Below are positions 1 to 23,219 of a DNA stretch of 23,219 nucleotides, one piece after another. Position numbers and translations under genes: made by a program. Position 1 is the first letter of the stretch. Each line of letters starts with the position of its first letter. A model generated the notes under the pieces. The model ran no database searches, was not told the DNA's origin, and worked only from the letters and a program-made list of their open reading frames with translations. This stretch comes from Sulfolobus ellipsoid virus 1 and six more viruses of crenarchaea: IMG/VR virus record IMGVR_UViG_2974561068_000001, positions 1 to 23,219 of that record, one strand, 5' to 3'.

Positions 1-173
1 GCTGCCTATTTGCTTTCTCCCGTTATCCCAAGGTCTTTAGGGCAATTTTCGTAAAAATCTGTAATACCCTACTTCAAAATTCAATTTCCCACCGTTACCT
101 ATATAAGGAACCTCCAAAAAACTGAATTTCTCTCTCACCTGCCAAACAAACCTACACCCCTCTCCCACCTCCC
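1..173 (+). repeat. Left inverted terminal repeat (173 bp)
   Basis: Position i pairs with 23220-i at every position I checked up to 173; first mismatch at 174 (T) vs 23046 (C). Confidence 0.97.
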
Positions 174-5207: not shown

Positions 5208-5531
5208 ATGGCTAGGAAAAAATCAGTTCTAAAAAGGATGTCTAGGAGTCCAGCAGACGTAGCCAGTAATGCGTGGGATAAATACCTATCTAAGATTAAC
5301 CAAATGATAGCTAATTATACTAGTGTTATGCAGAACATGCCCAGTAATGCAGACGCAGAGGCTAGATATGAGAAAGGTGTAGCCACATGGACCGCTATAA
5401 TGAGGAATCCAGAGGTTAGGAATGGTATTGCAGGAGTTGTTAGGAATGCTAAATATACTTATGAGAAAACTCTAATGGGAGTAAGCTCTACTGGTACTGT
5501 TCCTATAACTATTCCAGCACAGACTGGATAA
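5208..5531 (+). CDS. Basic alpha-helical protein, 107 aa; probable major nucleocapsid (DNA-wrapping) protein
   Basis: MARKKSVLKRMSR basic N-terminus, amphipathic helices, no TM, own strong TATA (TTTTATATA near 5174-5182), located in the structural block. The function is an inference. Confidence 0.7.
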   Translation: MARKKSVLKRMSRSPADVASNAWDKYLSKINQMIANYTSVMQNMPSNADAEARYEKGVATWTAIMRNPEVRNGIAGVVRNAKYTYEKTLMGVSSTGTVPITIPAQTG

Positions 5532-5546
5532 AAAAGGTGAAAAATT

Positions 5547-5825
5547 TTGAGTTATCAAACTTTACAAAGGTTTAATTTTTCTAACCTTACTAGTGATCTA
5601 TCAGAAGCTATAGGTGCCACGATAGGTATAGTAGCAGGAGGTTACTTATCATTAAAAGTATTCGCTAACTCTACTTATATGGGTCCAATAGTAACTTTAG
5701 CTATTGGTTTTGTTATCTTATTAGTGTTTCCAGATCTAGGGTTCTTAAATGGTATCGGTGCGGGCATGTTAGGTTACGGATTATATAAAATAATTCAAGT
5801 AGCATCTAACGGAGCAATCGTATAA
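5547..5825 (+). CDS. Three-TM Gly-rich membrane protein, 92 aa; paralog of 7191..7427
   Basis: TTG start with SD AAGGTGA; GxxxG-rich helices; aligns with ORF 7191. Confidence 0.85.
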   Translation: MSYQTLQRFNFSNLTSDLSEAIGATIGIVAGGYLSLKVFANSTYMGPIVTLAIGFVILLVFPDLGFLNGIGAGMLGYGLYKIIQVASNGAIV

Positions 5826-5863
5826 GCTAAAGTTTTATTTTTTACTTTTTCTAACTCTTTTTT

Positions 5864-6001
5864 ATGGGATTAATCTCAAGTGTTACGAATTATCTTAAAA
5901 GTAAGGGCACTTTTGGATTCGTTATAGCTCTATTGTTATTTATAATAGTAGGTTTAATAGATACTATCGTAGGTTCAATAATCTATGAATTTTTCGCGTG
6001 A
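5864..6001 (+). CDS. Membrane micropeptide, 45 aa, absent from the track (MGLISSVTNYLKSKGTFGFVIALLLFIIVGLIDTIVGSIIYEFFA)
   Basis: Hand translation; fills the 5825-6007 gap; amphipathic N-terminus plus hydrophobic segment; T/A-rich box about 28 nt upstream. Confidence 0.7.
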   Translation: MGLISSVTNYLKSKGTFGFVIALLLFIIVGLIDTIVGSIIYEFFA

Positions 6002-7190: not shown

Positions 7191-7427
7191 ATGTATACTC
7201 AGACAGTATCAGAAGTTATCGGTACTTTTACGGGCATATTTTTAGGAGGGTACTTTACGGTATCTGTATTAAGTGGTGCTATTGCTTCTAGTATTGTTGA
7301 AATAATAATAGCCATTATCTTACTTTACCTATTTCCAAATCAAGGCTTTATGAACGGATTAGGAATTGGAATATTAGCGATAGGGGTTTTAAATCTGGTA
7401 GCTAAACAAACTGGGGTACAATTATGA
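7191..7427 (+). CDS. Three-TM Gly-rich membrane protein, 78 aa; paralog of 5547..5825
   Basis: Shared pattern SE.IG...GI..GGY / FP..GF.NG.G.G.L. Confidence 0.85.
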   Translation: MYTQTVSEVIGTFTGIFLGGYFTVSVLSGAIASSIVEIIIAIILLYLFPNQGFMNGLGIGILAIGVLNLVAKQTGVQL

Positions 7428-7846: not shown

Positions 7847-7895
7847 GTTATTTTTACTATGAAATTTTATAACTCTTGAGATTAATCGTATCTTA

Positions 7896-8018
7896 ATGAG
7901 TGTTAGCCTATCAAATATAGGGAGTTCTATAAGTAATTTCTTTAGCGAAATTGTTAACAATCCAGCGTATCTATTGGCTTTTGGCATATTTATCGTATTC
8001 TTAATATTGATAATATAG
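7896..8018 (+). CDS. Membrane micropeptide, 40 aa, absent from the track (MSVSLSNIGSSISNFFSEIVNNPAYLLAFGIFIVFLILII)
   Basis: Hand translation; GAAA-TTTTATAA promoter about 27 nt upstream (leaderless); its stop is followed by SD AGGTGA for GTG 8029. Confidence 0.75.
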   Translation: MSVSLSNIGSSISNFFSEIVNNPAYLLAFGIFIVFLILII

Positions 8019-8028
8019 GTGATAAGAA

Positions 8029-9618
8029 GTGATTAGTCCAGACGGTTATCTGGAATTACTTATACCCACAGCTTACGAAAAGAACTTTAGGTTATTATTA
8101 AGAGATTTTCCATCTACATCTGTTCAATTAGGAAATGCCTATATATGGAATGCTTTCTTTCAGAGGTTTACAGACTATGGTAACTTACATCAGACTATAG
8201 TATCAAATGCTCAAGATATAGGTCCTTACGATAAGATGATTTTAGAACAGAACCCTTATTATACTAATGAGAACATAAGACAGAGCATATTAAAGGTCAT
8301 AAGGAAAACTTTCATAACTAACGTTTATTACTATACTTTAGCACTTTTTACAAATGGGTATATTATAGCTAATACTAATCAAGGGGCTTATTCTTTAGGT
8401 TTGTCTGGTTTACCTCAGTTCTATATCGTTTTTGATGGTATAGTACCTTTCTCTATCCAATTTATAATACCAATTCAGGTTACGAAAAACCCATTAAATG
8501 GAAACCTATGGAATTATTCAGCAGTGGGAGAAATAGCCTTATCATCTAATAATCCAAATGATCCCCACTGTTATCTTTTAAAATATCCATATACTACTCC
8601 AGAAAGCGTATCCTGTACTCTATCACAATCAACAGTTACTACTGAATCTGGCTCTTCTGTTAACGCAGTATTTTATCAGTCTGGAAGTACTTTACAGAAT
8701 ACTTATTCTGGAGACTGGATTTTAGACGCTATAGCCACATGGTTTAATTTAACCTCTTATGTGCCAAACGGTAATACCTCAGTAACTGTTAGTAATTTGG
8801 TATTACCCAATGGTAGTACTTATAGTCCATCATCATCTTATAACCCTTCTATTTACGTTTTGCAAACTTATTTACCATTAATTTATCCCACAACTAACGC
8901 TTTACCCTCTAACTTATACGGAGTAGTAAGGGCTCATTTAATCTTTACTAGATTTATCTCATTAAACCAGACTGTAATTAATAATGCAGGAAATGCTATT
9001 TCTTATTTTGGTAATATAGCTAATCCTAGACCTATAGATGTTAATATTCATGGTAATCCAAATACTGGCGTAAATGTTACAGTAGTAAGAGCAGGAGGTG
9101 AATCAGAGACTATTACATGTAATAAGTTATGGCTTAATGACCATTTTCTAATAATAACGCCTTTAGGGGCTATAACTAAGGGAGGTTTCTGTATTGATAT
9201 TAATAATACGCCACATATAATAGATACATCATCTTACTTATTCTCATCTAACACATTTGTACACACTTACTTATATGCCTCTTATTCAATGAATGGCTAT
9301 AACTATATTACTTATCAACCACTAAGTAATAGTGTGCTTAAATCAACTTTAAACGCCCCTAACGTATATGTTCCCACAGTAGGAAAGATAAAGAACGGAA
9401 ACGTATCTAAAGTTGTGGTATCTCAAAATGGTACATATATAGATCATGCAGTAGCGTTATCAGATGTTAATCTATATAATGAGTTTCACAATTCTTACGA
9501 TGCACAGAATACCACTCCTATAATAGGAGTAGGAGAGATAAGTGCAGGAGGGGCGATAGGATCCTTATCAGCTCTCCTAAGTATGTTAATATTTGGAATA
9601 GTTACCACGGTGAAATGA
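8029..9618 (+). CDS. Large S/T/N/Y-rich virion surface protein with C-terminal anchor, 529 aa
   Basis: GTG start with SD AGGTGA; beta-rich composition; C-terminal hydrophobic AIGSLSALLSMLIFGIVTTVK; no N-terminal signal peptide visible. Confidence 0.85.
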   Translation: MISPDGYLELLIPTAYEKNFRLLLRDFPSTSVQLGNAYIWNAFFQRFTDYGNLHQTIVSNAQDIGPYDKMILEQNPYYTNENIRQSILKVIRKTFITNVYYYTLALFTNGYIIANTNQGAYSLGLSGLPQFYIVFDGIVPFSIQFIIPIQVTKNPLNGNLWNYSAVGEIALSSNNPNDPHCYLLKYPYTTPESVSCTLSQSTVTTESGSSVNAVFYQSGSTLQNTYSGDWILDAIATWFNLTSYVPNGNTSVTVSNLVLPNGSTYSPSSSYNPSIYVLQTYLPLIYPTTNALPSNLYGVVRAHLIFTRFISLNQTVINNAGNAISYFGNIANPRPIDVNIHGNPNTGVNVTVVRAGGESETITCNKLWLNDHFLIITPLGAITKGGFCIDINNTPHIIDTSSYLFSSNTFVHTYLYASYSMNGYNYITYQPLSNSVLKSTLNAPNVYVPTVGKIKNGNVSKVVVSQNGTYIDHAVALSDVNLYNEFHNSYDAQNTTPIIGVGEISAGGAIGSLSALLSMLIFGIVTTVK

Positions 9619-9619
9619 G

Positions 9620-11659
9620 ATGACAGTAGTAGGTCAGTCTGGAGGATGGATAGCCTCCAATTCTGGACAGATAACTCCTAATTGTAGCGTAAATCCAGCG
9701 TCTTCTCCGTGCTCTAGTACAGTAAATAAAATGACTTATGGAATACCATCGGGTCAGTGCGGAGAACTATTTACCAGTGTACCGACTCTATATTATTCAT
9801 CTTGTGGATCTACACCTATGACATGGGTAGTTACTAATCCACAAAATCAATCATTTGCTTTTCAAGTGTTAGTATCATCTTCAGACCCTAACTTTATTGT
9901 AGTAATTATATATAACCCTAATGGCGTTAATACAGCAGATCCAAATTCATTAAATCTAATAGCCTCTATTGTAGCGACTTTTGCTAACGTATCTCAAGGT
10001 TATATTAAGGGAATAATTAATCCTAATGAATTAGGCACAAGTGTTAACCAGTGGATAAACCTTACTGTTGAAAACTCTAATCCAGACGGAAACTATCAAG
10101 ATGCCCCTATCCAGTGTAGTAAACAAACCAGTACAGCAGGTATTAATTATATCGTATGCCAGAGTAATATACAGTCTATGGCACCTAACTCTAATTATGT
10201 AGTAGCAGTATTCGATGATAATGGTAATCCAGTAGACTACGGTATGTACGCTCAAGTTTTCGTATGTAATCAACCTTATAGCCAATTACAACTATCTAAT
10301 CCAGCGACAGCAATAGAGGGATGCTATGTATATACTGAATGGTCTACTCAGTCTGGAATAATTGATATACCGATACCCTCTTATATCACTGGTGGATATT
10401 TCGGAGCTAACGTATATATAGAGGATAATAACGATTTCGATAGTGTAAATGCAGGCTTTTGGGTATCAATAAGTACTAGTGCACCTTTATACTCTTATAA
10501 TGTAAATGATATCTATAACGCGTTATCTAAATTAGTAGGTTCATCTCAAGCTAACACAGCTAAACAGTCACAGAGTAATCAGAAATCAACATCTGACCCA
10601 TCAACTCTAAAGAACCCACCGACTTTATCTATCCCAATATTAGCAATACAACACACTCCTTTATTAATAACGCAAAACGATAGAACTATACCAATTAATG
10701 TAGGAGAGTTAGCTAAAGGATATGTTGAGATGCCTATAGATATTAAAACTCCAGTTAGCGTAGTTACTAGAATAGGTTCAGTAGGTAACATAAGTGTATT
10801 ACCAATAAATGCCTCTGGGTTATTATCAACTAAATCAAGTTATGGTTACGTGGGAATAAGCAATAGACCTTATACTCCGTTACCTGTATTATTACCACAT
10901 TACTCTAAAGGATTATCAGTCCCTAAAATTTCACCATCTAATGTAATAACGAAAATGCCAGTAGCTAACATAAGACAAGGGGCTATAAGTGCACCGACAC
11001 AATATTCTCAGAGTGTAACTTATCAGAATAATGCAGGGATCCCACCTATATCTACTAGTAATTACGTAGTAACTACTACTAGTGTTAATACGAAATATAA
11101 TACTGGATATACTACGGGCTCATTATATATTACTGGACCTTCAGTTCAATCATCTGGGTATTTAAGTTATAGTCCACCTTCTACTTCTGGATTCGGAGGA
11201 CAGACTTACATCTTACCACAGAATGGATCTATAATAATTAATAACAGTGGTCAGGATATCGATGTTGAGACTACTCGCCAGAATTTTGATGATATAGTAA
11301 ATAACGGAGTGGTTACTAGACCAATAGGAGTAGTTGAACAATCTCAACCTGTATCATCTGGTTCATTAACCTTTACTTATTCTAGACCAGTAAGTATTAC
11401 TATGGGAGCAGACCCTACTACAGTAACTATAAGTAAAAGAGGAAATAACGTAATATTCGTAAATTCTGGACAGAAATCAGTACAGTTATATGCTTCTAAT
11501 GGTAACCCCGTAAGTTATAATGTAAATTATCCAGAAGTTTACGTAGTTCATACTAAAGGATTAGGAGCATCATTAACTACAGCAATAATAGAGGGATTAA
11601 AGACTAATCCAGCCAGTTCAGCTTTCTTAGTGTTACCTTTCCTACTGTTCTTAATATAA
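9620..11659 (+). CDS. Large S/T/N-rich virion surface protein with C-terminal anchor, 679 aa
   Basis: Cys-containing N-terminal beta domain, Q/S/T linker, terminal SAFLVLPFLLFLI; no N-terminal signal peptide visible. Confidence 0.85.
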   Translation: MTVVGQSGGWIASNSGQITPNCSVNPASSPCSSTVNKMTYGIPSGQCGELFTSVPTLYYSSCGSTPMTWVVTNPQNQSFAFQVLVSSSDPNFIVVIIYNPNGVNTADPNSLNLIASIVATFANVSQGYIKGIINPNELGTSVNQWINLTVENSNPDGNYQDAPIQCSKQTSTAGINYIVCQSNIQSMAPNSNYVVAVFDDNGNPVDYGMYAQVFVCNQPYSQLQLSNPATAIEGCYVYTEWSTQSGIIDIPIPSYITGGYFGANVYIEDNNDFDSVNAGFWVSISTSAPLYSYNVNDIYNALSKLVGSSQANTAKQSQSNQKSTSDPSTLKNPPTLSIPILAIQHTPLLITQNDRTIPINVGELAKGYVEMPIDIKTPVSVVTRIGSVGNISVLPINASGLLSTKSSYGYVGISNRPYTPLPVLLPHYSKGLSVPKISPSNVITKMPVANIRQGAISAPTQYSQSVTYQNNAGIPPISTSNYVVTTTSVNTKYNTGYTTGSLYITGPSVQSSGYLSYSPPSTSGFGGQTYILPQNGSIIINNSGQDIDVETTRQNFDDIVNNGVVTRPIGVVEQSQPVSSGSLTFTYSRPVSITMGADPTTVTISKRGNNVIFVNSGQKSVQLYASNGNPVSYNVNYPEVYVVHTKGLGASLTTAIIEGLKTNPASSAFLVLPFLLFLI

Positions 11660-11815: not shown

Positions 11816-12661
11816 ATGTGGGTAGCTTTTGGGGCTAAATCAACTAGTAAAGTAGCTAAGGACCTTAACGAAAAGGTACCGACTAAAAAATTAGCATATA
11901 TGGGTCCTTTTAACCCTAACATTTGGAAAAATTATGACGCAATTTATGGCGTAGTTGAGTGGGTATTAGAAGAGGATGAGATATTATTTCTGAATAACTT
12001 AGCTAAAAAGATACCTATTATATTCGCATCTTATTATGCCAGATTTTTAGCCAGATGTTACCCGTGTACAGTTGTTCATCATGAGGTGGCTAATGATTTT
12101 CTAATGGCTAAAGCTAACGAAAAGTTCAGTGATTACGATTCCTTTACTATTTTCTTTTATATGGAAAGGAAAAATCCAGATATATTAGAGAAATTAATTA
12201 GGCACCCTAAGTTTAAGAGAAAACTACTTATCGTGTCTAACAACTGTACTAAACTTAATACGCATAATAGCAAATGTATTAACTCTTTTGGAAACCTAGT
12301 TGAATCTGACGTAAAAGCATTAATGTTAAATAAAACCTTTATTTGGGTCTCTGGAAATGAGGGGTTTGGTTTACCACCATTAGAAGCTTCTAGTGTGGGT
12401 AGCCCAGTAGCAGGGTATAGAGTAATGCCATTATCTGAGTGGTATCCATTTCCTAATAAACTATATGGTAAGATTTCGTTTAAAGAGGTAAGAATGGGAG
12501 GTGTATTAAATCCGACAGCAAAACCAGATGATCTAGATGATTTTGTAGAATACGTAAACAGTATAGAGAGAAAGCAGGATAAGGACCTTAGGGATTACGT
12601 TTTAGAAAACTATACAAACAGAAAGCAATATTATAAAATAGATGAGATAGTTAATAGGTGA
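11816..12661 (+). CDS. GT-B fold glycosyltransferase (GT4-like), 281 aa
   Basis: SGNEGFGLPPLEASSVGSPV matches the GT4 EGFG.P..EA..G.PV signature. Confidence 0.9.
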   Translation: MWVAFGAKSTSKVAKDLNEKVPTKKLAYMGPFNPNIWKNYDAIYGVVEWVLEEDEILFLNNLAKKIPIIFASYYARFLARCYPCTVVHHEVANDFLMAKANEKFSDYDSFTIFFYMERKNPDILEKLIRHPKFKRKLLIVSNNCTKLNTHNSKCINSFGNLVESDVKALMLNKTFIWVSGNEGFGLPPLEASSVGSPVAGYRVMPLSEWYPFPNKLYGKISFKEVRMGGVLNPTAKPDDLDDFVEYVNSIERKQDKDLRDYVLENYTNRKQYYKIDEIVNR

Positions 12662-12903: not shown

Positions 12904-13106
12904 TGGGACAGACTGATAACGATTTCACAGATTTTCTAGTCAGAACAAATAAGACCACAATCACAGACTGTTACTTAGTGGGGAGTGACGGATTTTATAT
13001 TAAAACAGACTGTGTAAAGATTATTAAAGGAAATAAAAGTAGTGCATCAACCTTTTTTCTACCTTTATCTTTATCCGTATTAATGTTACTGGTGAGTATA
13101 ATATGA
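12900..13106 (+). CDS. Small protein with C-terminal TM, 68 aa
   Basis: ATGA-coupled on both sides; ends TFFLPLSLSVLMLLVSII. Confidence 0.75.
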   Translation: MMGQTDNDFTDFLVRTNKTTITDCYLVGSDGFYIKTDCVKIIKGNKSSASTFFLPLSLSVLMLLVSII

Positions 13107-13357
13107 GCATTATCTCAGATGCCTCTTCTGTAGCCACAATAGTTTTTTACATATTTTTCTTTTTATCTATAACTTTCAAACCAGTTAAGAAATGGTTACT
13201 CCGCGTTCTAATTTTAGATACTCTTAGAGATTTCTTAGCAGACGGAGACCAAACAATAAAAGAAATAAGATCACTTTACTATTTACTTAAGATAGCCTTA
13301 GAACATAAAGACGTAATGAAAAAAGAAGAATTTCACGTTATAGAAAAAGATGACTAA
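13103..13357 (+). CDS. N-terminal TM plus helical protein, 84 aa; probable virus-associated pyramid (egress) protein
   Basis: TM VATIVFYIFFFLSITF followed by amphipathic helices and a charged tail, the architecture of PVAP/SIFV gp43-type proteins. I recall an 84-aa SEV1 ORF described as the six-sided pyramid protein (unverified recall). Confidence 0.7.
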   Translation: MSIISDASSVATIVFYIFFFLSITFKPVKKWLLRVLILDTLRDFLADGDQTIKEIRSLYYLLKIALEHKDVMKKEEFHVIEKDD

Positions 13358-13611
13358 TCATTTTTCTTAGCCATCTTTATCGCGTTATCTATTTTATCTT
13401 TATTCTCATTAAGTACCTCTTTAATACCCCCTTCGATATCATTAAGCAATGATAACCTCGATAGAACAAATTGGTAACACTCATCATTTTCACATGTAAT
13501 CCTTAATTCTATCACCTTACTTTTCTTATGTCCTATAACATCTATCTTATTTATGCCTCTCTGTTTTAGTTCACTTAAAATATAATTTGCTATGACAGAT
13601 GGATCTATCAT
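13354..13611 (-). CDS. Hypothetical protein, 85 aa
   Basis: Leaderless from the shared TTATAA at 13636-13641; its stop overlaps that of 13103..13357. Confidence 0.8.
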   Translation of the reverse strand: MIDPSVIANYILSELKQRGINKIDVIGHKKSKVIELRITCENDECYQFVLSRLSLLNDIEGGIKEVLNENKDKIDNAIKMAKKND

Positions 13612-13635
13612 TACTTTAACAATATTACCTAATGC

Positions 13636-13643
13636 TTATAAAT
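13636..13643. promoter_or_regulatory. Single palindromic TATA box centred between divergent leaderless genes
   Basis: TTATAA at 13636-13641 is 25-30 nt from ATG 13611 (-) and 23-28 nt from ATG 13664 (+). Confidence 0.65.
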
Positions 13644-13663
13644 CTATACGCAAAATTTTTATT

Positions 13664-13909
13664 ATGAAAAAAGAAATCCTCCTAAACCTATGTGCGATAT
13701 TAGATAACAAAAGGGTAACCACGATAGGAGAGTTAAGTTACATGACTGGTATTTATACGCAAAAGCTTTTTTACTACGTTAAAACCCTTCAGAAATACGG
13801 AATTGTAGAGTTAAAAAAAGAGAGAATAACTACGATAGTAATGTTGAAAGATTACGAATACTGTCAGCGATTATTTCAAATACCAGACAGTTTTACAGTA
13901 TCCTTTTAA
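13664..13909 (+). CDS. Winged helix-turn-helix transcription regulator, 81 aa
   Basis: TIGELSYMTGIYTQKLFYYVKTLQKYGIVEL is a typical wHTH. ATG 13664 preferred to track 13592, which would overlap the divergent gene. Confidence 0.8.
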   Translation: MKKEILLNLCAILDNKRVTTIGELSYMTGIYTQKLFYYVKTLQKYGIVELKKERITTIVMLKDYEYCQRLFQIPDSFTVSF

Positions 13910-13936
13910 TAATAGCTTTTTCTTAAGATAAAATTA

Positions 13937-16381
13937 ATGCCTACTATCTGTAGTAATGTACCTACGTATTCTCTCTACGATGTAGCTAACTCTATAGGCG
14001 TTAATATACCTTCTGACGCTAAAAATGTTACATGTTTATCATGCGAATTATTAGCTTTACTTACGTGCACAAGTCAGAACTTAAACAATTTACTAATGCC
14101 TACTTTTACGCCAATAACAGAGAATAATGTATTTACAGTTTTACCTCAAAATAATGCTTTACTCTTTAACGCTATTAAAAAGTACTATAGGACATTAGGT
14201 AAGTTCTTTAAAAACGATGCTTTCTTCTACGCAATTTTATATGACTTATACAATTTAAGATATTACGGTATAACGATAACCAATAACGTAGTTAGTGGAT
14301 TATTTAACTTATTACAAAACGTGTTAACACAGTTTGCAAACTCACTAAACAATTTCTTTATTACATTAATGAATAACTATATCTCAGCTAACCCAGCTAA
14401 CGTAATGTACTATTTCTTTAATAATTTTTACCAGTTAACTGGATTAGTACCAAATGGGGCTTACTTAACTAGCTCTACTGGATCAAATTTCATTACGCCT
14501 AACCCATCTTTTTCTCCTAATCAAAACGGATACCCCTTTACCATCTTATTTCCTACTGTAATCTTACCTAATGGAAACCAAATGATAATAGGAGTGGGTA
14601 TAGGCTTTCAAGCTTACGGATATTTAACCAATACTAGCACTAGTACTAATACTTATTCACCTTATATACAGTACGCAGTAATGATAATACCATCAATTTT
14701 CGCTATAAAAGAGCCTACAGCTAACGTAATAATACTAAATTATCCTTATACTCAACCATCATCTTTTAATAGTTTCATCAACTCAAACTACAACGCTAAC
14801 ATACAATTCCACTTACCTATAATAAGTGTTTCAATATCATCTTTCTCATTAAGTAATTTAAGTAATAACCAGTTTTACACCCCTTACCAAATAGTAAGTT
14901 TAGTTAACGGTAATAATACACCTAACTCACAGACAGCGACAGACTCAGAGATATTAATGTTAGCTAACAATTTAGATTTAATAGTAACTTTTATGATGTT
15001 TCAACCAGCTTTTACAAATATACTTACTGGACAGCAATTAATACCTAATGTATCACAACCTAACTATACAGAAATTTATTGGGCATACCCCTCAACAAAT
15101 AATAAGATATATTCGGTATTAACACAAACTGGTTTAGTAGTCTATGGCGTTACTGGCTTAGTAGATTACTTTTCATCCATAGCCTCAGTTACAGCTATGA
15201 ATACACCATCTTATACTGGAGTAACCCAGACTAACTTATCAGTGCTAAATTGCTTTACCTATAATAATGTAAACTACTGTCTAGCTTTCAGCTCTAACCC
15301 GATAATTGCGACAGATAACTTAAACGTTCAAGTACCATCTTATATTTACGTAATACCTACAGACTCAATAAACTATAACTTAGCCACATCTTATTATACA
15401 ATATATAATAACTCATCTAGTACAATAACTTATCAAATAGAGAACACAGCAGTTTATGCCACACCTAGCACTTTCTTTTTTGGATCTCTAGTACCCAATA
15501 ACGTAGATATAACTGATATAGTCCATGCATGGTTTGATAATTTCTATCAGAATGTGCTAATACTGTTCTATGCCCCTAATTATTTTGTACAAACATTATC
15601 ACAAATACCACCTAAAAATAGTGTTACGACTATTTCGATAGCTTTTCCGAATAACAATCCCCAATTAATAAGTGAACTAAGTTTCAGTGCCTTATCCTTT
15701 ATTTTGCAATCATACTTACAAGGTCTAATAAGTTTTCAATATGTAGTTTTACCCACTTTCCAATTCTTCCCATCTATTAAGATAAACAATCAACTATATA
15801 GTAACGTATATCTACAGTTAGATGCTAATAGCGTTACCATTACGCCATCTGGAGTATCATCTCCAGCAGGTATATTATGGAATGGTTCATCTTTCGTTAT
15901 TATAGAGCCAAATACTACGATAGCCTCTACATCATCTCTTAATATGATATATAGTTCAGATATCTGGAGTACTGATAATATAGAAGCTAATAATGTGCCA
16001 GTAAATGTATTTTCAACATTAAGCCCACCACAACCTAAACAGTATGGCTATATATTAGATATAACAACTAGCACAACTATACAACCTTACGGAGGTCAGT
16101 TTAATGGTTATATTGTAGACTCAAGTAATGAACAGTTATATCAAGGAACAATAACAATTAATAGCCCTAATAACCAGTCTCAACTAATCTATTATTACCC
16201 AGTAGAAACTTTCGTAACACAGTCTGGATCTGTAATCGTAGATACTAGTAGTATATTTCCATCAACTGTTACCATACAAACTATTAATGGGTTAGAACTA
16301 TTAGCTATATTAGGAGTAATAGCAGGAGGTGCAGGAGTGGCTTACTATAAAAAACATAAAAAGGAGATGAAACATGAGTAG
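13937..16381 (+). CDS. Large spike-like protein with C-terminal TM, 814 aa; paralog of 16374..18299
   Basis: C-terminal LELLAILGVIAGGAGVAYY plus basic tail; about 200 C-terminal residues align with the next ORF; N-terminal CxxC. Confidence 0.85.
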   Translation: MPTICSNVPTYSLYDVANSIGVNIPSDAKNVTCLSCELLALLTCTSQNLNNLLMPTFTPITENNVFTVLPQNNALLFNAIKKYYRTLGKFFKNDAFFYAILYDLYNLRYYGITITNNVVSGLFNLLQNVLTQFANSLNNFFITLMNNYISANPANVMYYFFNNFYQLTGLVPNGAYLTSSTGSNFITPNPSFSPNQNGYPFTILFPTVILPNGNQMIIGVGIGFQAYGYLTNTSTSTNTYSPYIQYAVMIIPSIFAIKEPTANVIILNYPYTQPSSFNSFINSNYNANIQFHLPIISVSISSFSLSNLSNNQFYTPYQIVSLVNGNNTPNSQTATDSEILMLANNLDLIVTFMMFQPAFTNILTGQQLIPNVSQPNYTEIYWAYPSTNNKIYSVLTQTGLVVYGVTGLVDYFSSIASVTAMNTPSYTGVTQTNLSVLNCFTYNNVNYCLAFSSNPIIATDNLNVQVPSYIYVIPTDSINYNLATSYYTIYNNSSSTITYQIENTAVYATPSTFFFGSLVPNNVDITDIVHAWFDNFYQNVLILFYAPNYFVQTLSQIPPKNSVTTISIAFPNNNPQLISELSFSALSFILQSYLQGLISFQYVVLPTFQFFPSIKINNQLYSNVYLQLDANSVTITPSGVSSPAGILWNGSSFVIIEPNTTIASTSSLNMIYSSDIWSTDNIEANNVPVNVFSTLSPPQPKQYGYILDITTSTTIQPYGGQFNGYIVDSSNEQLYQGTITINSPNNQSQLIYYYPVETFVTQSGSVIVDTSSIFPSTVTIQTINGLELLAILGVIAGGAGVAYYKKHKKEMKHE

Positions 16382-18299
16382 CGTATTTACATCTTGTGTA
16401 GAGGGAGCAGTAACTGGATTTGCAATATCATCTATGTTAGTGTCTTTAGGAATTGTAGCCGTGGGAGTACCACCTGTAGCCGTAGCTTTAGGAATAATAT
16501 TAGGTGCGACAGCTTTCGGATGTGCAATTTTTACATTAGCCAATCAACACGCTATACAGAGTACATCAGCTTTAACTGTAGAAGCATTAATTACAGCTTT
16601 AGTAGCAGAACAGAATGACATTAACGACTTAATGACTGACCTAAACAACTTCTTATCATATTTATATAACAATGCACAAACTATTACTAAAGGTATACAG
16701 TACGACATCTTATGGATAGTAGCGACTAGTATTAATCAACCCTTATACGCAGTATTAAACTATGTAGAGAAATACGCACAGTTATTTACGGGTAATTTAG
16801 TATCAGCTTATCAAAAGTTTTTCCAATCGTTAGTTAATTCAATATATGGTTTATTTAACACTATAAACGCCAGTTACTCAGTTATCCAAAATGTACCTTT
16901 TACATTTAATGGGGTAACAGTATACCCTACTCAACTAGAAGACGCGGGTTTACTAGTATACGAAACACAACTATTAGGTCAGAATATATACGTACCTTTT
17001 GGGTTCTACATTAAAGACACTCTAAACAATATTTACATGTACTTATTTTCACAGTTACCATCTGGTAATTATTACTTATATTCCAGCGTAACAAACAGTG
17101 CTTACAATAATAGCATAACCTATAATTATTTTGTAGGGTTCTTAAACTATAAATACCTAATAGATCCCCTTAGTGGGCTATTAATAGGCAGAGCATTAAA
17201 TACTGGTAGTGTCCCCTCTGGAGCATCTGGAAATGGGATGACTTTTGATAATGTACAACTAGACTATCCTTATTCATACACTGGAGGATTTATAGATACT
17301 AACGCTAACTCAATATTCATACTAATACCTACTACATCTTCTGGAGATACAGTTAACATATATTTCGAATACTACAATAATGGAATAACATTTTACGGTT
17401 TCAATTACGAAAACCAGACAGTAGCGTTTTCATGGGCTCTTAACGTATATAATTACATCAATTTCCTAAACAATTTCTTTAACCAGATAAGTAATTTCGC
17501 CACACAGATCTACAACTTATTACAGTCCAATGGTATAACTAACCCTACTCAAGCAATACAGTATTTAGGTCTAGGAGCTATAAACTTAGCATTTCCATCA
17601 TGTAACCCCTCTTATATTTATGAAAATAATATAGTTCAACAGTTCCTAAATGCCTTACTAAGTCAGCAAAAACTACAACTAAACACTAACCTCAACTTAG
17701 TATTTCCTAATTTCATATACTCCTCTTCAGTTACTATTAACGGACAGACATATCAAGATGCCTATATCCAATTATTTGATCCAGAGTTAACTTTACCTAA
17801 TACAACACAATACGGAGGATGGTTATACTTACCTAATAACAATCAAGTAATACCGATAGCACCTAATACTTATATTAAGACTTCTAACCCTAAAAGATGG
17901 TCTTTAGACATATGGTATCCAGATAACCAAATAAGCGAATGCCAAATAGTACCAGTAACAGAATTCCAATCTATCAATCCTAATCCACAGAACACAGAAG
18001 GGTTTATACTAAACGTTAACAATACAACAGTAATAAGTAATACTCAGACTTTCAATAACGCCTATATAGTAAGTAATACAGCTACTATATTATATAAAGG
18101 TACAATAACTGTAACAGAATCAACTCCTATAACTTATGTTCCAGCACAGTTAGCTTATCAAGTCTTCTACGGAAATGAGATAACAGATACATCTCAGATA
18201 ATACAACAAACCCCATCAACAAGCTATTTAGTAGTCTTACTAATACTATTATTAATAGGTGTAGCAGTTGGTAAGAAAATTAACAAAAAGAGAACTTAA
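16374..18299 (+). CDS. Large spike-like protein with N-terminal hydrophobic hairpin and C-terminal TM, 641 aa; candidate fusogen
   Basis: Residues 8-55 are a Cys-flanked Gly/Ala/Val hairpin with a PP kink, followed by helical heptad-like regions and beta domains, ending YLVVLLILLLIGVAV-GKKINKKRT. Confidence 0.85.
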   Translation: MSSVFTSCVEGAVTGFAISSMLVSLGIVAVGVPPVAVALGIILGATAFGCAIFTLANQHAIQSTSALTVEALITALVAEQNDINDLMTDLNNFLSYLYNNAQTITKGIQYDILWIVATSINQPLYAVLNYVEKYAQLFTGNLVSAYQKFFQSLVNSIYGLFNTINASYSVIQNVPFTFNGVTVYPTQLEDAGLLVYETQLLGQNIYVPFGFYIKDTLNNIYMYLFSQLPSGNYYLYSSVTNSAYNNSITYNYFVGFLNYKYLIDPLSGLLIGRALNTGSVPSGASGNGMTFDNVQLDYPYSYTGGFIDTNANSIFILIPTTSSGDTVNIYFEYYNNGITFYGFNYENQTVAFSWALNVYNYINFLNNFFNQISNFATQIYNLLQSNGITNPTQAIQYLGLGAINLAFPSCNPSYIYENNIVQQFLNALLSQQKLQLNTNLNLVFPNFIYSSSVTINGQTYQDAYIQLFDPELTLPNTTQYGGWLYLPNNNQVIPIAPNTYIKTSNPKRWSLDIWYPDNQISECQIVPVTEFQSINPNPQNTEGFILNVNNTTVISNTQTFNNAYIVSNTATILYKGTITVTESTPITYVPAQLAYQVFYGNEITDTSQIIQQTPSTSYLVVLLILLLIGVAVGKKINKKRT

Positions 18300-19675: not shown

Positions 19676-20032
19676 ATGAGTGATAACCTAAGTCAGGATG
19701 ATTTACGCGTTCTCGGAAAAATAATCAAGTTAGAAAGACCTTATGAGTGTGGTCCTATAGAGTATAAAAGGTACTACTTTTACCCATGTTTAGAGGATAC
19801 TGGATCCTATATCATAACAGCGACTGACCCATCTCAAGTAATAGAAGATGAGGACATTATGGAATTGGTAAAATATAACTACTCATTAGAACTAGTAGTA
19901 GTTGAACCTTACGATGAACAGCAGGTAAAATTACTTAAAAGAAACAAAAGGAGATACGCCACAATAGTTAACGGTAGACTTATCGAGAACAGACTAAAGT
20001 ACTTAGGTGTCAAAATTGGCAAACCCTCTTAA
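19676..20032 (+). CDS. Hypothetical protein, 118 aa; first gene of the replication operon
   Basis: TTTAAAAA at 19634-19641, SD AGGTG; acidic and Tyr-rich. Confidence 0.85.
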   Translation: MSDNLSQDDLRVLGKIIKLERPYECGPIEYKRYYFYPCLEDTGSYIITATDPSQVIEDEDIMELVKYNYSLELVVVEPYDEQQVKLLKRNKRRYATIVNGRLIENRLKYLGVKIGKPS

Positions 20033-20588
20033 CAGAGTTAAGTCTTTTTTTTCCCGTGTAGCTAAAACAATAAGCGAAAGCCCGATAGGTAAAGCCTTTA
20101 GAGCAATAGGAGAAAAGATAGGAATAATTAAACCAAAACCACCACCTCCCCCTCCTAAACCTCCCACAATTACACCATTAAAGACTCCAGCAAAACCACC
20201 CACAGTTACACCATTAAAAACACCTACACCTCCTAAACCTCCCACAGTTACCCCTCCTAAACCTCCTACACCTCCTAAACCAGTTACCCCTCCTAAAGTT
20301 ACTCCCACAATTACCCCAGTAAGAGCAGTACCTTTTAGACCTAGAAAAGTGACTTACCAATTGATAATCGCCACATGCGTTAGAATAATACAAACCAGAT
20401 ATGGTAAAGTTAAGTTAATAATACTTTATTCTGAAGTTGTAAGACCTACTGAGAACTTATACGATAAGATAAGCCAATTAAGAGGGATAAACTGTCATGA
20501 CTTTAAAGTTTACACTTTTGATCATTTACCCACTAGAGACGATATAGAGAGAGCTTTAGCAAATTACCTATACCACACTCCCCTATAG
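20016..20588 (+). CDS. Proline-rich protein with N-terminal amphipathic helices (about 190 aa), directly upstream of pPolB
   Basis: The track GTG 20007 lies within SD AGGTG (20005-20009), so TTG 20016 is the likely start. Central PPKPPT(V/I)TP repeats; stop abuts the pol start. Confidence 0.85.
   Translation: MANPLNRVKSFFSRVAKTISESPIGKAFRAIGEKIGIIKPKPPPPPPKPPTITPLKTPAKPPTVTPLKTPTPPKPPTVTPPKPPTPPKPVTPPKVTPTITPVRAVPFRPRKVTYQLIIATCVRIIQTRYGKVKLIILYSEVVRPTENLYDKISQLRGINCHDFKVYTFDHLPTRDDIERALANYLYHTPL
20130..20321 (+). repeat. Degenerate coding tandem repeats, PPKPPT(I/V)TP(LKT)
   Basis: Repeated nucleotide units such as CCTAAACCTCCCACA(A/G)TTAC and TTACACCATTAAA. Confidence 0.85.
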
Positions 20589-23046: not shown

Positions 23047-23219
23047 GGGAGGTGGGAGAGGGGTGTAGGTTTGTTTGGCAGGTGAGAGAGAAATTCAGTT
23101 TTTTGGAGGTTCCTTATATAGGTAACGGTGGGAAATTGAATTTTGAAGTAGGGTATTACAGATTTTTACGAAAATTGCCCTAAAGACCTTGGGATAACGG
23201 GAGAAAGCAAATAGGCAGC
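23047..23219 (-). repeat. Right inverted terminal repeat (173 bp)
   Basis: Reverse complement of 1-173, ending ...GCAAATAGGCAGC. Confidence 0.97.

What the first reader, a model, noticed from the sequence alone, without database searches (positions are those of the whole stretch)
13937..18299. Paralogous spike pair: candidate two-component archaeal membrane-fusion machine
Seen: the 814- and 641-aa proteins align over their C-terminal part (VLPTF/VFPNF; SIKINNQLYSNVYLQL/SVTINGQTYQDAYIQL; IEPNT/IAPNT; SSDIW/SLDIW; VPVNVF/VPVTEF; GYIL/GFIL; LYQGTITI/LYKGTITV; DTS; TM plus basic tail) and probably in the N-terminal helix (ELLALLTCTSQNLNNL / EALITALVAEQNDINDL). Only the 641-aa copy has an N-terminal Cys8-Cys50-bracketed hydrophobic hairpin (GAVTG...GVPPV...GATAFG); the 814-aa copy has a Cys-rich N-terminus and a longer central region. 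Known: enveloped viruses need a fusogen with a fusion peptide and a TM anchor (e.g. pleolipovirus VP5). Inference: duplication split the work into a fusion subunit (641) and a shielding or receptor-binding subunit (814), potentially a fusogen class acting on tetraether membranes.
Basis: partly seen in the sequence, partly recalled or inferred. Interest (0 to 1): 0.82.

Follow-up and report, generated by a model that had tools for sequence, protein, structure and literature searches.

The report
Paired envelope spike genes of SEV1
Two neighbouring genes of the hot-spring archaeal virus SEV1 encode related membrane-anchored surface proteins, and the one that carries a strongly conserved greasy hairpin is the best current candidate for the protein that fuses the virus's unusual tetraether envelope with its host.

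Summary
The window is the complete genome of Sulfolobus ellipsoid virus 1 (SEV1, Ovaliviridae). ORF814 and ORF641 are paralogs: 32% identity over 223 C-terminal residues, BLASTP E 1e-16, hhalign E 4e-20. Only ORF641 has the Cys8-Cys50 hydrophobic hairpin.

ORF814 is the published virion protein VP2. ORF641 is annotated only as "3 transmembrane domain protein". The two genes form a translationally coupled operon.

ORF641 belongs to a family found in five clades of related hot-spring viral contigs. The Cys-bracketed, Gly/Ala-rich hairpin is its most conserved segment, and a central beta region is the most variable. Four of the five clades also encode a hairpin-less partner that shares the C-terminal domain.

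The best non-family Foldseek hits of a low-confidence ORF641 model are pleolipovirus fusion spikes (E 0.015 and 0.008). There is no sequence homology to them.

ORF641 as the fusion subunit, with VP2 as its derived partner, is plausible but unproven. Neither the presence of ORF641 in virions, nor a hetero-complex, nor fusion activity has been shown. A permanent three-pass anchor remains a serious rival reading.

The parts
13904..13914 (+). TATA-like box (TTTTAATAATA) about 28 nt upstream of the ORF814 ATG. It suggests a leaderless first gene of the operon.
   Evidence: Sequence read directly. The assignment as a promoter is inference from known Sulfolobus promoter architecture.
13937..16381 (+). 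ORF814 = SEV1 VP2: 814 aa, 90 kDa. It has no N-terminal hydrophobic segment and a single C-terminal TM, which gives a tail-anchored topology.
   Evidence: Named 'VP2 transmembrane domain protein [Sulfolobus ellipsoid virus 1]', 814 aa, in BFVD.
13949..14068 (+). ORF814 residues 5-44: a Cys-bracketed but polar N-terminal loop (C5...C44, with extra C33 and C36). It is the degenerate counterpart of the ORF641 hairpin.
   Evidence: C44 falls in an invariant column with C50 of the ORF641 family. The bracket interior has KD 0.48 and 11% Gly+Ala, against KD 1.8 and 34% in ORF641.
14447..15616 (+). ORF814 residues 171-560: an enlarged, poorly conserved central region.
   Evidence: 25% identity and 100 gapped columns against the L001/L002 homologs. 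AlphaFold2 left it unmodelled, with pLDDT about 21-30 over most of residues 160-520.
15620..16261 (+). ORF814 residues 562-775: the membrane-proximal beta-rich domain shared with ORF641.
   Evidence: BLASTP E 1e-16; hhalign E 4e-20. This is the only confidently modelled part of ORF814, with 10-residue block mean pLDDT mostly 71-88 (one block 57).
16283..16378 (+). ORF814 C-terminal TM (residues 783-804) and basic tail YYKKHKKEMKHE.
   Evidence: Hydropathy. The YYKKHKK motif is invariant in homologs.
16363..16366 (+). GGAG Shine-Dalgarno-like motif 7 nt upstream of the ORF641 ATG, inside the 3' end of ORF814. The two ORFs overlap by 8 nt (16374-16381).
   Evidence: Sequence. Coupling is conserved: a 17-nt overlap in L001 and a GTGA overlap in L009.
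16374..18299 (+). ORF641: 641 aa, 71 kDa, the hairpin-bearing paralog. UniProt/BFVD names it '3 transmembrane domain protein'.
16395..16523 (+). ORF641 residues 8-50: Cys8...Cys50 bracket around two Gly/Ala/Val-rich hydrophobic arms joined by a PP turn. It is a candidate fusion hairpin, or alternatively a double-pass anchor.
   Evidence: Cys-x40-42-Cys is conserved in all five clades. G49-C50 are invariant. This is the most conserved segment of the family.
16578..16886 (+). ORF641 residues 69-171: three long helices, one of 48 residues, carrying the KG(I/F)QYD motif.
   Evidence: AlphaFold2 secondary structure, pLDDT 50-80. Motif conservation.
16899..17423 (+). ORF641 residues 176-350: variable beta-rich central domain, the candidate host-contact head.
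   Evidence: Lowest identity and most indels across the family. Highest dN within the L001-like clade: about 0.14 in the three L002-containing (most diverged) pairs versus 0.03-0.06 in the other ectodomain segments there, and lower overall in the closer pairs.
17568..18212 (+). ORF641 residues 399-613: the shared C-terminal domain (short helices plus a beta sandwich), with conserved C410 and C523.
   Evidence: Conserved Cys columns. Also shared with the hairpin-less partners of other clades.
18222..18296 (+). ORF641 C-terminal aliphatic TM (about residues 617-633) and basic tail KKINKKRT.
   Evidence: Hydropathy. Modelled as helix 617-636.

Best explanation
ORF814 and ORF641 form a bicistronic, translationally coupled operon in SEV1. 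Both encode envelope proteins that are anchored by a C-terminal TM helix, with a basic tail inside the virion. Both lack a signal peptide. That fits SEV1, which builds its envelope inside the cytoplasm, so the 'ectodomain' never has to cross a membrane.

ORF641 is the ancestral, universally conserved member. Its layout runs in this order: N-terminal Cys-stapled, Gly/Ala-rich hydrophobic hairpin; long-helix bundle; variable beta head; helix; beta-rich membrane-proximal domain; TM anchor. This order is colinear with the pleolipovirus fusion spike VP5. I propose that ORF641 is the SEV1 entry and fusion protein, and that the hairpin is the element that inserts into the host tetraether membrane.

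ORF814 (VP2) is a paralog that kept the membrane-proximal domain and the Cys bracket, lost the hydrophobic interior of the hairpin, and enlarged its middle. I propose that it is the abundant companion spike, for attachment and/or for covering and holding ORF641 through the shared domain.

Shown here: the paralogy, the anatomy, the conservation pattern, the gene coupling, and the identity ORF814 = VP2.
Taken from the literature: fusion at entry, the tetraether envelope, intracellular envelopment, and spikes that lengthen from 7 to 17 nm in extreme acid.
Inferred: the fusion role of the hairpin, the presence of ORF641 in virions, and the hetero-complex.
For: Identity of the window:
- 23,219 bp, 33% GC, 173-nt perfect terminal inverted repeats. 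This matches the ICTV profile of SEV1.

Paralogy:
-.

The ORF641 family:
- It occurs in five clades.
- The Cys-x40-42-Cys bracket is conserved; the hairpin has 33-41% Gly+Ala.
- The hairpin is the most conserved segment: 81-86% identity against 54-58% overall in the nearest clade, and 41-48% against about 27% in three distant clades. It is better conserved than the C-terminal anchor.
- The hairpin composition resembles the mature VP5 N-terminus, which has roughly half Gly+Ala by my count on the sequence.
- ORF641 is one of about half a dozen SEV1 genes (3-6 matched per locus) shared with distant relatives.

The partner:
- The ORF814 bracket is retained but polar.
- Hairpin-less partners in other clades share the C-terminal domain: hhalign probability 93% and 90%, E 4e-7 and 2e-6. 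Other tail-anchored proteins of similar composition score below 10%.
- Start/stop overlaps occur in three clades.

Location and topology:
- Charged residues make up 6-7% of both proteins, against 18-39% in cytoplasmic SEV1 proteins. This is the composition of an acid-exposed surface protein.
- VP2, ORF529 and ORF679 all lack signal peptides.

Resemblance to known fusogens:
- The best non-family Foldseek hits are HRPV-2 VP5 (PDB 6qgi, E 0.015, 580 columns, rank 1 of 350,542 chains) and HRPV-11 VP4 (E 0.0076).
- The published VP5 anatomy matches the order of elements.

Literature:
- R18 lipid mixing at 75 C but not at 25 C, preprint only.
- GDGT envelope, intracellular envelopment, and acid-triggered spike extension.
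Against: - ORF641 is not one of the four named structural proteins. Its database name is only '3 transmembrane domain protein'.
- Each hairpin arm is about 21 residues long and very hydrophobic. That is enough for a stable double-pass anchor, from which release would be energetically costly.
- The AlphaFold2 model is poor (mean pLDDT 55.5; hairpin about 30). The Foldseek hits have TM-scores of only 0.20-0.24 and E-values above 1e-3.
- hhalign finds no sequence relation to VP5 (probability 0.3%).
- The ORF814 model gave no usable hits.
- At shallow divergence ORF814-type genes are not faster-evolving than ORF641-type genes.
- The published authors saw no spike change under infection conditions (pH 3, 75-100 C).
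- The Beppu-virus-like locus L004 shows no detectable partner in the stretch held.
Confidence: 0.45

Rival explanations
1. ORF641 is a permanent three-pass envelope or membrane protein. In this reading the N-terminal hairpin is simply a second, double-pass anchor that pins both ends of the ectodomain to the viral membrane. Fusion, if protein-driven, is carried out by another protein.
For: - There are two arms of about 21 residues with a helix-breaking PP turn; Kyte-Doolittle hydropathy reaches 2.47.
- Small-xxx-small motifs typical of packed TM helices are visible in the sequences.
- The depositors' name is '3 transmembrane domain protein'.
- AlphaFold2 draws two helices.
- SEV1 has further tail-anchored surface proteins, ORF529 and ORF679, that could hold the fusion function.
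Against: - The hairpin is conserved well beyond mere hydrophobicity, and more than the true C-terminal anchor.
- It is Gly/Ala-rich, unlike the aliphatic C-terminal TM.
- The paralog VP2 and all other large surface proteins do without such an anchor.
- VP5 sets a precedent: its N-terminal 20 residues are predicted to be TM but are in fact a shielded putative fusion peptide.
Confidence: 0.25
2. ORF641 is an envelope-biogenesis factor. Its hydrophobic hairpin would help nucleate or curve the membrane that SEV1 forms de novo in the cytoplasm. It would be absent from, or only a trace in, mature virions.
For: - ORF641 is not among the named VP1-VP4 proteins.
- SEV1 envelopes form inside the cell, and empty vesicles are seen as intermediates.
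- The family is universal among relatives.
Against: - About 555 residues have 7% charged and 34% N/S/T/Q content, the same composition as VP2 and unlike every cytoplasmic SEV1 protein. This argues for exposure to pH 2-3.
- It shares a membrane-proximal domain and a coupled operon with a proven virion protein.
Confidence: 0.12
3. Both proteins are attachment proteins or glycan- and S-layer-degrading spikes, as the SEV1 authors speculated for VP1-VP3. The hairpin would have no role in fusion.
For: - The preprint reports NetGO 'hydrolase' predictions for VP1-VP3 and S-layer disruption at entry.
- Both proteins have variable central domains.
Against: - There is no Pfam, PHROG or PDB sequence hit to any hydrolase.
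- Foldseek shows no enzyme fold above noise.
- This reading leaves the strongest conservation signal, the hairpin, unexplained.
Confidence: 0.13
4. The N-terminal hydrophobic segment of ORF641 is a signal sequence, cleaved or uncleaved, for Sec-dependent export.
For: It is hydrophobic and lies at the N-terminus.
Against: - There is no positively charged n-region: the protein starts MSSVFTSCVE.
- It is twice the length of a signal peptide h-region, with a conserved turn and a conserved Cys pair.
- VP2, ORF529 and ORF679 reach the envelope without any signal.
- The envelope is acquired in the cytoplasm.
Confidence: 0.03

Closest known systems
Pleolipovirus spike / fusion protein (HRPV-2 and HRPV-6 VP5, HRPV-1 and HRPV-11 VP4; PDB 6qgi, 6qgl)
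   Same: - It is the spike of an enveloped archaeal virus.
- The order of elements is colinear: hydrophobic Gly/Ala-rich N-terminus, helix bundle with one helix over 40 residues, least-conserved beta subdomain, helical subdomain, beta subdomains, C-terminal TM.
- It is the best non-family Foldseek hit in both libraries.
- Spikes that extend about two-fold on a harsh trigger are reported for both viruses.
   Different: - There is no detectable sequence homology, and TM-scores are only 0.20-0.33.
- VP5 is made with a cleaved signal peptide, budding at and fusing with a diether bilayer. ORF641 has no signal peptide and sits in a tetraether envelope made inside the cell.
- The VP5 hydrophobic segment is a single stretch of about 20 residues. 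ORF641 has a 41-residue Cys-bracketed two-arm hairpin.
- VP5 works alone as a monomer, whereas ORF641 comes with a paralogous partner.
Disulfide-bracketed internal fusion loops of class I fusion subunits (filovirus GP2, avian sarcoma/leukosis virus TM). This comparison is from my own knowledge, not from a tool result.
   Same: A hydrophobic loop of about 35-45 residues near the N-terminus of the membrane-anchored subunit, closed by a conserved Cys pair and followed by a long helix.
   Different: - Those loops are only partly hydrophobic, and they sit on trimeric coiled-coil proteins with a second heptad repeat before the TM and a proteolytically separated receptor-binding subunit.
- None of these features is seen here.
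- No Foldseek hit to such proteins rises above noise.
Receptor-binding plus fusion subunit pairs of enveloped viruses (HA1/HA2-type, or separate attachment and fusion proteins as in paramyxoviruses). Established knowledge.
   Same: Two co-expressed envelope proteins: one carries the conserved hydrophobic element, and the other is more divergent at long range.
   Different: - Here the two are paralogs, each with its own TM anchor. They are not cleavage products and not unrelated proteins.
- The hairpin protein carries its own variable head, so the division of labour is not clean.
SEV1 VP2 as published (Wang et al. 2018; Zhang et al. 2025)
   Same: ORF814 is that protein. The authors place it in the envelope through a TM domain.
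   Different: In the papers I could read, its paralogy to ORF641, the degenerate Cys bracket, and a possible partnership are not mentioned.

Membership tests
Pleolipovirus VP4/VP5-like fusion spikes | Sequence homology to the VP4-like spike family | tested here: not met
   hhalign of the ORF641 family (A3) against HRPV-2/HRPV-6 VP5 (A4): probability 0.3%, E 0.18. A profile search of PDB sequences finds nothing.
Pleolipovirus VP4/VP5-like fusion spikes | V-shaped two-domain fold: N1 four-helix bundle, N2 beta subdomain, and C1-C3 | tested here: inconclusive
   6qgi is rank 1 in PDB (E 0.015, probability 0.66, 580 columns, TM 0.20/0.24). HRPV-11 VP4 is the first non-family hit in BFVD (E 0.0076). 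However, the query model has mean pLDDT 55.5, and the ORF814 model gave nothing.
Pleolipovirus VP4/VP5-like fusion spikes | Hydrophobic segment at the mature N-terminus plus a C-terminal TM anchor | tested here: met
   Hydropathy of ORF641 residues 11-57 and 612-638. For VP5.
Pleolipovirus VP4/VP5-like fusion spikes | Type I topology, made with a cleaved N-terminal signal peptide | tested here: not met
   The ORF641 N-terminus has no n-region and no separate signal ahead of the hairpin. The VP5 precursor carries an N-terminal extension upstream of its annotated mat_peptide.
Pleolipovirus VP4/VP5-like fusion spikes | Mediates virus-cell membrane fusion | not testable with these tools
   Only virus-level R18 lipid mixing is reported for SEV1, in a preprint. 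No protein has been assigned.
Class I viral fusion proteins | Trimeric coiled coil with two heptad-repeat regions, the second next to the TM; proteolytic priming | tested here: not met
   A beta-rich domain, not a helix, precedes the TM. No class I protein scores better than E about 1 in Foldseek. Oligomeric state could not be tested.
Class II / class III fusogens and fusexins | Characteristic three-domain beta-rich fold with internal fusion loops | tested here: not met
   No such structure appears among the Foldseek hits in PDB or BFVD.
Disulfide-bracketed fusion loop | Conserved Cys pair closing a hydrophobic loop | tested here: met
   Cys-x40-42-Cys is present in all five clades of the ORF641 family. 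Actual disulfide formation is not testable here.
Tail-anchored membrane proteins | No signal peptide, and a single TM within about 30 residues of the C-terminus | tested here: met
   ORF814: the only hydrophobic segment is 783-804 of 814 residues. The same pattern holds for ORF529, and for ORF679 by eye: its C-terminal hydrophobic end did not pass the hydropathy threshold in the scan. ORF641 has this anchor plus the hairpin.
SEV1 structural proteins (VP1-VP4) | Detected in purified virions | not testable with these tools
   ORF814 carries the name VP2 and ORF641 does not. The primary proteomics paper was not available.

The most novel reading that the evidence does not exclude
The ORF641 family, together with its hairpin-less partner, is a dedicated two-protein fusion machine for tetraether monolayer membranes. 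In this reading a disulfide-stapled helical hairpin, long enough to span the membrane, is released from a paralog-shielded prefusion spike and inserts as a membrane-spanning wedge into the host monolayer. That would give a route to fusion that does not need the classical hemifusion stalk, which a monolayer cannot readily form. It would also mean that pleolipovirus VP5 and ovalivirus spikes descend from one ancient archaeal fusogen lineage.
Probability: 0.2. Interest if true: 0.85.

Novelty: new variant of a known kind. Interest (0 to 1): 0.62.

Why it matters
How an enveloped virus fuses with a membrane made of membrane-spanning tetraether lipids is an open question. The only archaeal fusogen characterised so far, pleolipovirus VP5, acts on diether bilayers, and the SEV1 authors state that the fusion mechanism remains to be explored.

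This analysis names a concrete and conserved candidate, and the exact element to mutate: residues 8-57 and the Cys pair. It also names a likely partner, VP2.

It shows that the arrangement recurs in related hot-spring viruses, which gives natural variants for comparison. A weak structural link to VP5, if confirmed, would connect two archaeal virus families that share no sequence similarity.

The virus itself and VP2 are already published, so the new content is the relationship between the two proteins and the functional hypothesis.

Tried and rejected
- Nucleotide and protein searches of the annotated phage collection with the region, the whole window and ORF641 found no match. SEV1 is not in that collection.
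- Pfam and PHROG scans of both proteins gave only noise.
- PDB sequence-profile searches found nothing.
- The 2018 SEV1 paper (PMC5809745) and the supplements of the 2025 paper are not held. The ORF assignments of VP1 and VP3, and any virion proteomics for ORF641, therefore could not be checked.
- MK064566 is not in the annotated collections.
- IMG/VR scans with three alignments returned only SEV1 itself.
- Word-indexed protein searches with alignments A2 and A3 added no new members.
The scan with A7 added six loci.
- hhalign restricted to the N-terminal halves of the two families was not significant (E 0.14), although it used the same register as the joint alignment.
- The AlphaFold2 model of ORF814 was too poor (pLDDT 43.5) and its Foldseek search was uninformative. 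It gave no independent test of the VP5 resemblance.
- I expected ORF814-type genes to evolve faster at all time scales. That is rejected: it holds only for SEV1 against the L001-like clade (30% versus 56% identity), not within that clade.
- The similarity between the L006 621-aa protein and ORF814 is only marginal by BLAST (E 0.003, tail region). The link to the family rests on hhalign against the ORF641 profile.

Full report
**What the window is**

The window is 23,219 bp long with 33% G+C. It ends in perfect 173-nt inverted repeats. The ICTV profile gives Sulfolobus ellipsoid virus 1 (SEV1, Ovaliviridae, MF144115) as a linear genome of 23,219 bp, 33% G+C, with 172-bp terminal repeats.

The window also encodes an 84-aa ORF at 13103-13357 with an N-terminal TM. 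This matches the published pyramid protein SEV1-ORF84. BFVD returns SEV1 proteins of exactly 641 and 814 aa as the top structural matches. The window is therefore the complete SEV1 genome.

**Checking the observation**

- BLASTP aligns residues 566-777 of ORF814 with 403-613 of ORF641 at 32% identity, E 1e-16.
- A profile-profile comparison using the two closest homologs of each protein gives E 4e-20 over 237 columns and runs through the TM and basic tail.
- ORF641 alone has an N-terminal hydrophobic stretch (residues 11-57) between C8 and C50, with a PP turn.
- ORF814 has only a C-terminal TM, four Cys in its first 44 residues, and a longer middle.

In a joint 13-sequence alignment, ORF814 C44 falls in an invariant column with C50 of the ORF641 family, and Y102-D103 fall with the QYD motif.

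Paralogy over nearly the full length is still likely:
- A family HMM aligns positions 48-648 to the L001 homolog of ORF814 in one stretch (i-E 1e-14).
- My ORF641 model aligns over 863 columns with the BFVD model of ORF814 (E 2.9e-13).

**What is already known**

BFVD/UniProt names the 814-aa protein 'VP2 transmembrane domain protein' and the 641-aa protein '3 transmembrane domain protein'. ORF814 is therefore a recognised virion protein, and ORF641 is not.

The SEV1 literature that I could read reports the following:
- There are four structural proteins. VP4 is the nucleocapsid protein, and a detergent-removable envelope holds the others.
- VP1 and VP2 are presumed to be TM-anchored, and NetGO predicts VP1-VP3 to be 'hydrolases'.
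- Spikes about 7 nm long densely cover a 5-nm envelope, and they lengthen to 17 nm only at pH 0.5.
- The envelope is made of GDGT-0 to GDGT-4 tetraethers. Virions are enveloped inside the cell and leave through pyramids.
- In the preprint only, R18 lipid mixing with host cells occurs at 75 C but not at 25 C.
- The authors state that the fusion mechanism remains to be explored.

None of these texts mentions the paralogy or the hairpin.

**Gene organisation**

A TATA-like box lies about 28 nt upstream of the ORF814 ATG. ORF641 starts 8 nt before the ORF814 stop, behind a GGAG motif. The same coupling is seen in related contigs: a 17-nt overlap in L001, and a GTGA start/stop overlap between the partner gene and the ORF641 homolog in L009. 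Co-expression is thus a conserved feature.

**The ORF641 family**

Database searches found close relatives at 52-58% identity in syntenic contigs. Distant full-length relatives at 21-28% identity came from four further lineages, including a 26.5-kb NCBI viral genome, MK064566.

All members share these features:
- an N-terminal Cys, two Gly/Ala/Val-rich arms, and an invariant Gly-Cys, with Cys-x40-42-Cys spacing;
- a KG(I/F)QYD motif;
- two further conserved Cys (C410 and C523);
- an aliphatic C-terminal TM, followed in most clades by a short basic tail.

The hairpin is the best conserved part of the protein. Identity there is 81-86% against 54-58% overall in the nearest clade, and 41-48% against about 27% in three distant clades. 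The central region, residues 176-350, is the worst conserved.

Within the L001-like clade both genes are under strong purifying selection (omega 0.04-0.09). The highest dN lies in that same central region of the ORF641-type protein.

ORF641 is among about half a dozen SEV1 genes (3-6 matched per locus) that have homologs in the distant loci. Others include the methyltransferase, the glycosyltransferase and the probable VP4.

**The partner**

ORF814-type proteins are detectable by direct sequence search only in SEV1 and the L001-like clade. They differ much more between those two groups (30-31% identity) than ORF641 does (56-58%). They keep a Cys-x31-38-Cys bracket, but its interior is polar: KD 0.5-0.7 and 11-19% Gly+Ala.

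In two other clades, the large hairpin-less tail-anchored protein encoded just upstream also shares the C-terminal domain with the ORF641 family:
- the L009/L007 pair: hhalign probability 92.8%, E 4e-7, 222 columns;
- the L006/L016 pair: probability 89.6%, E 1.9e-6.

Four other families of similar composition and topology, including SEV1 ORF529 and ORF679, score below 10%. A hairpin protein paired with a hairpin-less relative is therefore a recurring arrangement, not a peculiarity of SEV1.

**Topology**

ORF814, ORF529 and ORF679 have no N-terminal signal sequence and a single hydrophobic segment at the C-terminus. In ORF814 this segment is followed by a basic tail.

Their ectodomains, and that of ORF641, contain 6-9% charged residues and 32-37% N/S/T/Q. 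Cytoplasmic SEV1 proteins have 18-39% charged residues. This is the composition expected for surfaces exposed to pH 2-3.

SEV1 is enveloped inside the cytoplasm, so the outer face of the envelope faces the cytosol during assembly. Tail-anchored insertion then explains the missing signal peptides; this step is inference. It also makes a signal-peptide role for the ORF641 hairpin unnecessary, because VP2 reaches the envelope without one.

**Structure**

AlphaFold2 with nine family sequences gave a low-confidence ORF641 model: mean pLDDT 55.5, pTM 0.48, and about 30 over the hairpin. Its order of elements is clear nonetheless:
- two hairpin helices;
- three long helices, one of 48 residues;
- a beta region;
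- a 32-residue helix and short helices;
- a beta sandwich;
- the TM helix.

No Foldseek hit reaches E 1e-3 in PDB. Rank 1 of 350,542 chains is HRPV-2 VP5 (6qgi; E 0.015, 580 columns, TM 0.20/0.24). HRPV-6 VP5 is rank 8. In BFVD, after the family's own members, the next hit is the spike VP4 of HRPV-11 (E 0.0076).

The published VP5 has this order of elements:
- a hydrophobic 20-residue mature N-terminus, predicted to be TM but shielded in the crystal;
- a four-helix bundle with one helix over 40 residues;
- a least-conserved beta subdomain;
- a helical and two beta subdomains;
- a C-terminal TM.

That is the same order as in ORF641.

Against this resemblance, hhalign sees no sequence relation. 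Cry-type toxins with a helical-then-beta layout follow at E 0.2-0.3. The ORF814 model was too poor to serve as an independent test. I treat the VP5 resemblance as a lead, not a result.

**Interpretation**

The most economical reading is that the ORF641 family is the conserved entry protein of ovalivirus-like viruses and that its Cys-stapled hairpin is the membrane-active element. VP2 and its analogs would be derived companions that share the membrane-proximal domain.

This reading explains four things:
- why the hairpin is conserved more than a simple anchor would need to be;
- why it is Gly/Ala-rich like the VP5 N-terminus rather than aliphatic like the true anchor;
- why the paralog could lose it;
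- why the genes are coupled.

It does not establish that ORF641 is in virions, that the two proteins bind each other, or that either one fuses membranes.

The main rival is that the hairpin is a permanent double-pass anchor, as the database name implies. Its length and hydrophobicity are fully compatible with that.

**Verdict**

- The virus and VP2 are known. What is new is the paralogy, the family-wide conserved Cys-bracketed hairpin, the recurring partner, and a weak structural link to the only characterised archaeal fusogen.
- I rate it a new variant of a known kind (a viral fusion or spike glycoprotein system), with interest 0.62.

Noticed in passing
window 1-173 and 23047-23219: Perfect 173-nt terminal inverted repeats. 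The window is a complete linear genome that matches the published SEV1 in length and G+C content.
   Followed up: yes
window 20007-20588 (+), tandem repeats at 20193-20297: A 193-aa ORF with Pro/Thr/Lys-rich repeats (PPKPPT-like, from 9- to 42-nt DNA repeats) ends exactly where the protein-primed family B DNA polymerase gene starts (20588). The ICTV profile says no terminal protein has been identified, and by its position this ORF is a candidate. It has no Pfam hit.
   Followed up: partly
window 5547-5825 and 7191-7427 (+); inverted repeat 5854-5897 / 7858-7901: Two small, very low-charge membrane proteins (92 and 78 aa) are paralogs (36% identity, E 8e-10). They flank ORF384, and the block ORF384-ORF78-ORF140 is flanked by a 44-nt imperfect inverted repeat (ORF92 lies just upstream of its left arm). 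ORF92 has homologs in distant loci L006 and L009.
   Followed up: partly
window 8029-9618 and 9620-11659 (+): ORF529 and ORF679 are two further large, low-charge, N/S/T-rich proteins with a C-terminal hydrophobic anchor and no signal peptide. They are conserved at 42-47% identity in L001/L002, unrelated to the ORF641/ORF814 family by hhalign, and likely include VP1 and/or VP3.
   Followed up: partly
window 5208-5531 (+): ORF107 is basic and helical-looking, about 12 kDa, with about 21% R+K+N by my count. It has a homolog in L009 (39% identity). It is probably the published nucleocapsid protein VP4.
   Followed up: partly
window 11816-12661 (+): A glycosyltransferase (weak GT1 Pfam hit) is conserved in L001, L002 and four of the five distant related loci (not in the 3.5-kb L005 fragment). 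It sits a few genes from the spike genes there, which fits cytoplasmic glycosylation of the envelope proteins.
   Followed up: partly
window 16310-16543 (-): A 77-aa antisense ORF opposite the hairpin-coding region also appears 'conserved' (65-68% identity) in L001/L002. This is most likely a by-product of the strong conservation of the hairpin on the + strand.
   Followed up: no
L015 3641-5539: In this metagenomic contig the ORF641 homolog is split into two ORFs (375 and 225 aa). This is either a disrupted gene or an assembly error.
   Followed up: no
L004 (NCBI MK064566.1, 26.5 kb): This genome is probably the Beppu hot-spring virus cited by the SEV1 authors. It has an ORF641 homolog (684 aa) but no detectable hairpin-less partner in the 22 kb held. 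Its 758-aa tail-anchored protein shows no similarity to the family.
   Followed up: partly
window 13592-13909 (+): A 105-aa ORF immediately upstream of the spike operon has a weak winged-helix HTH signature. It may be a regulator of the operon.
   Followed up: no
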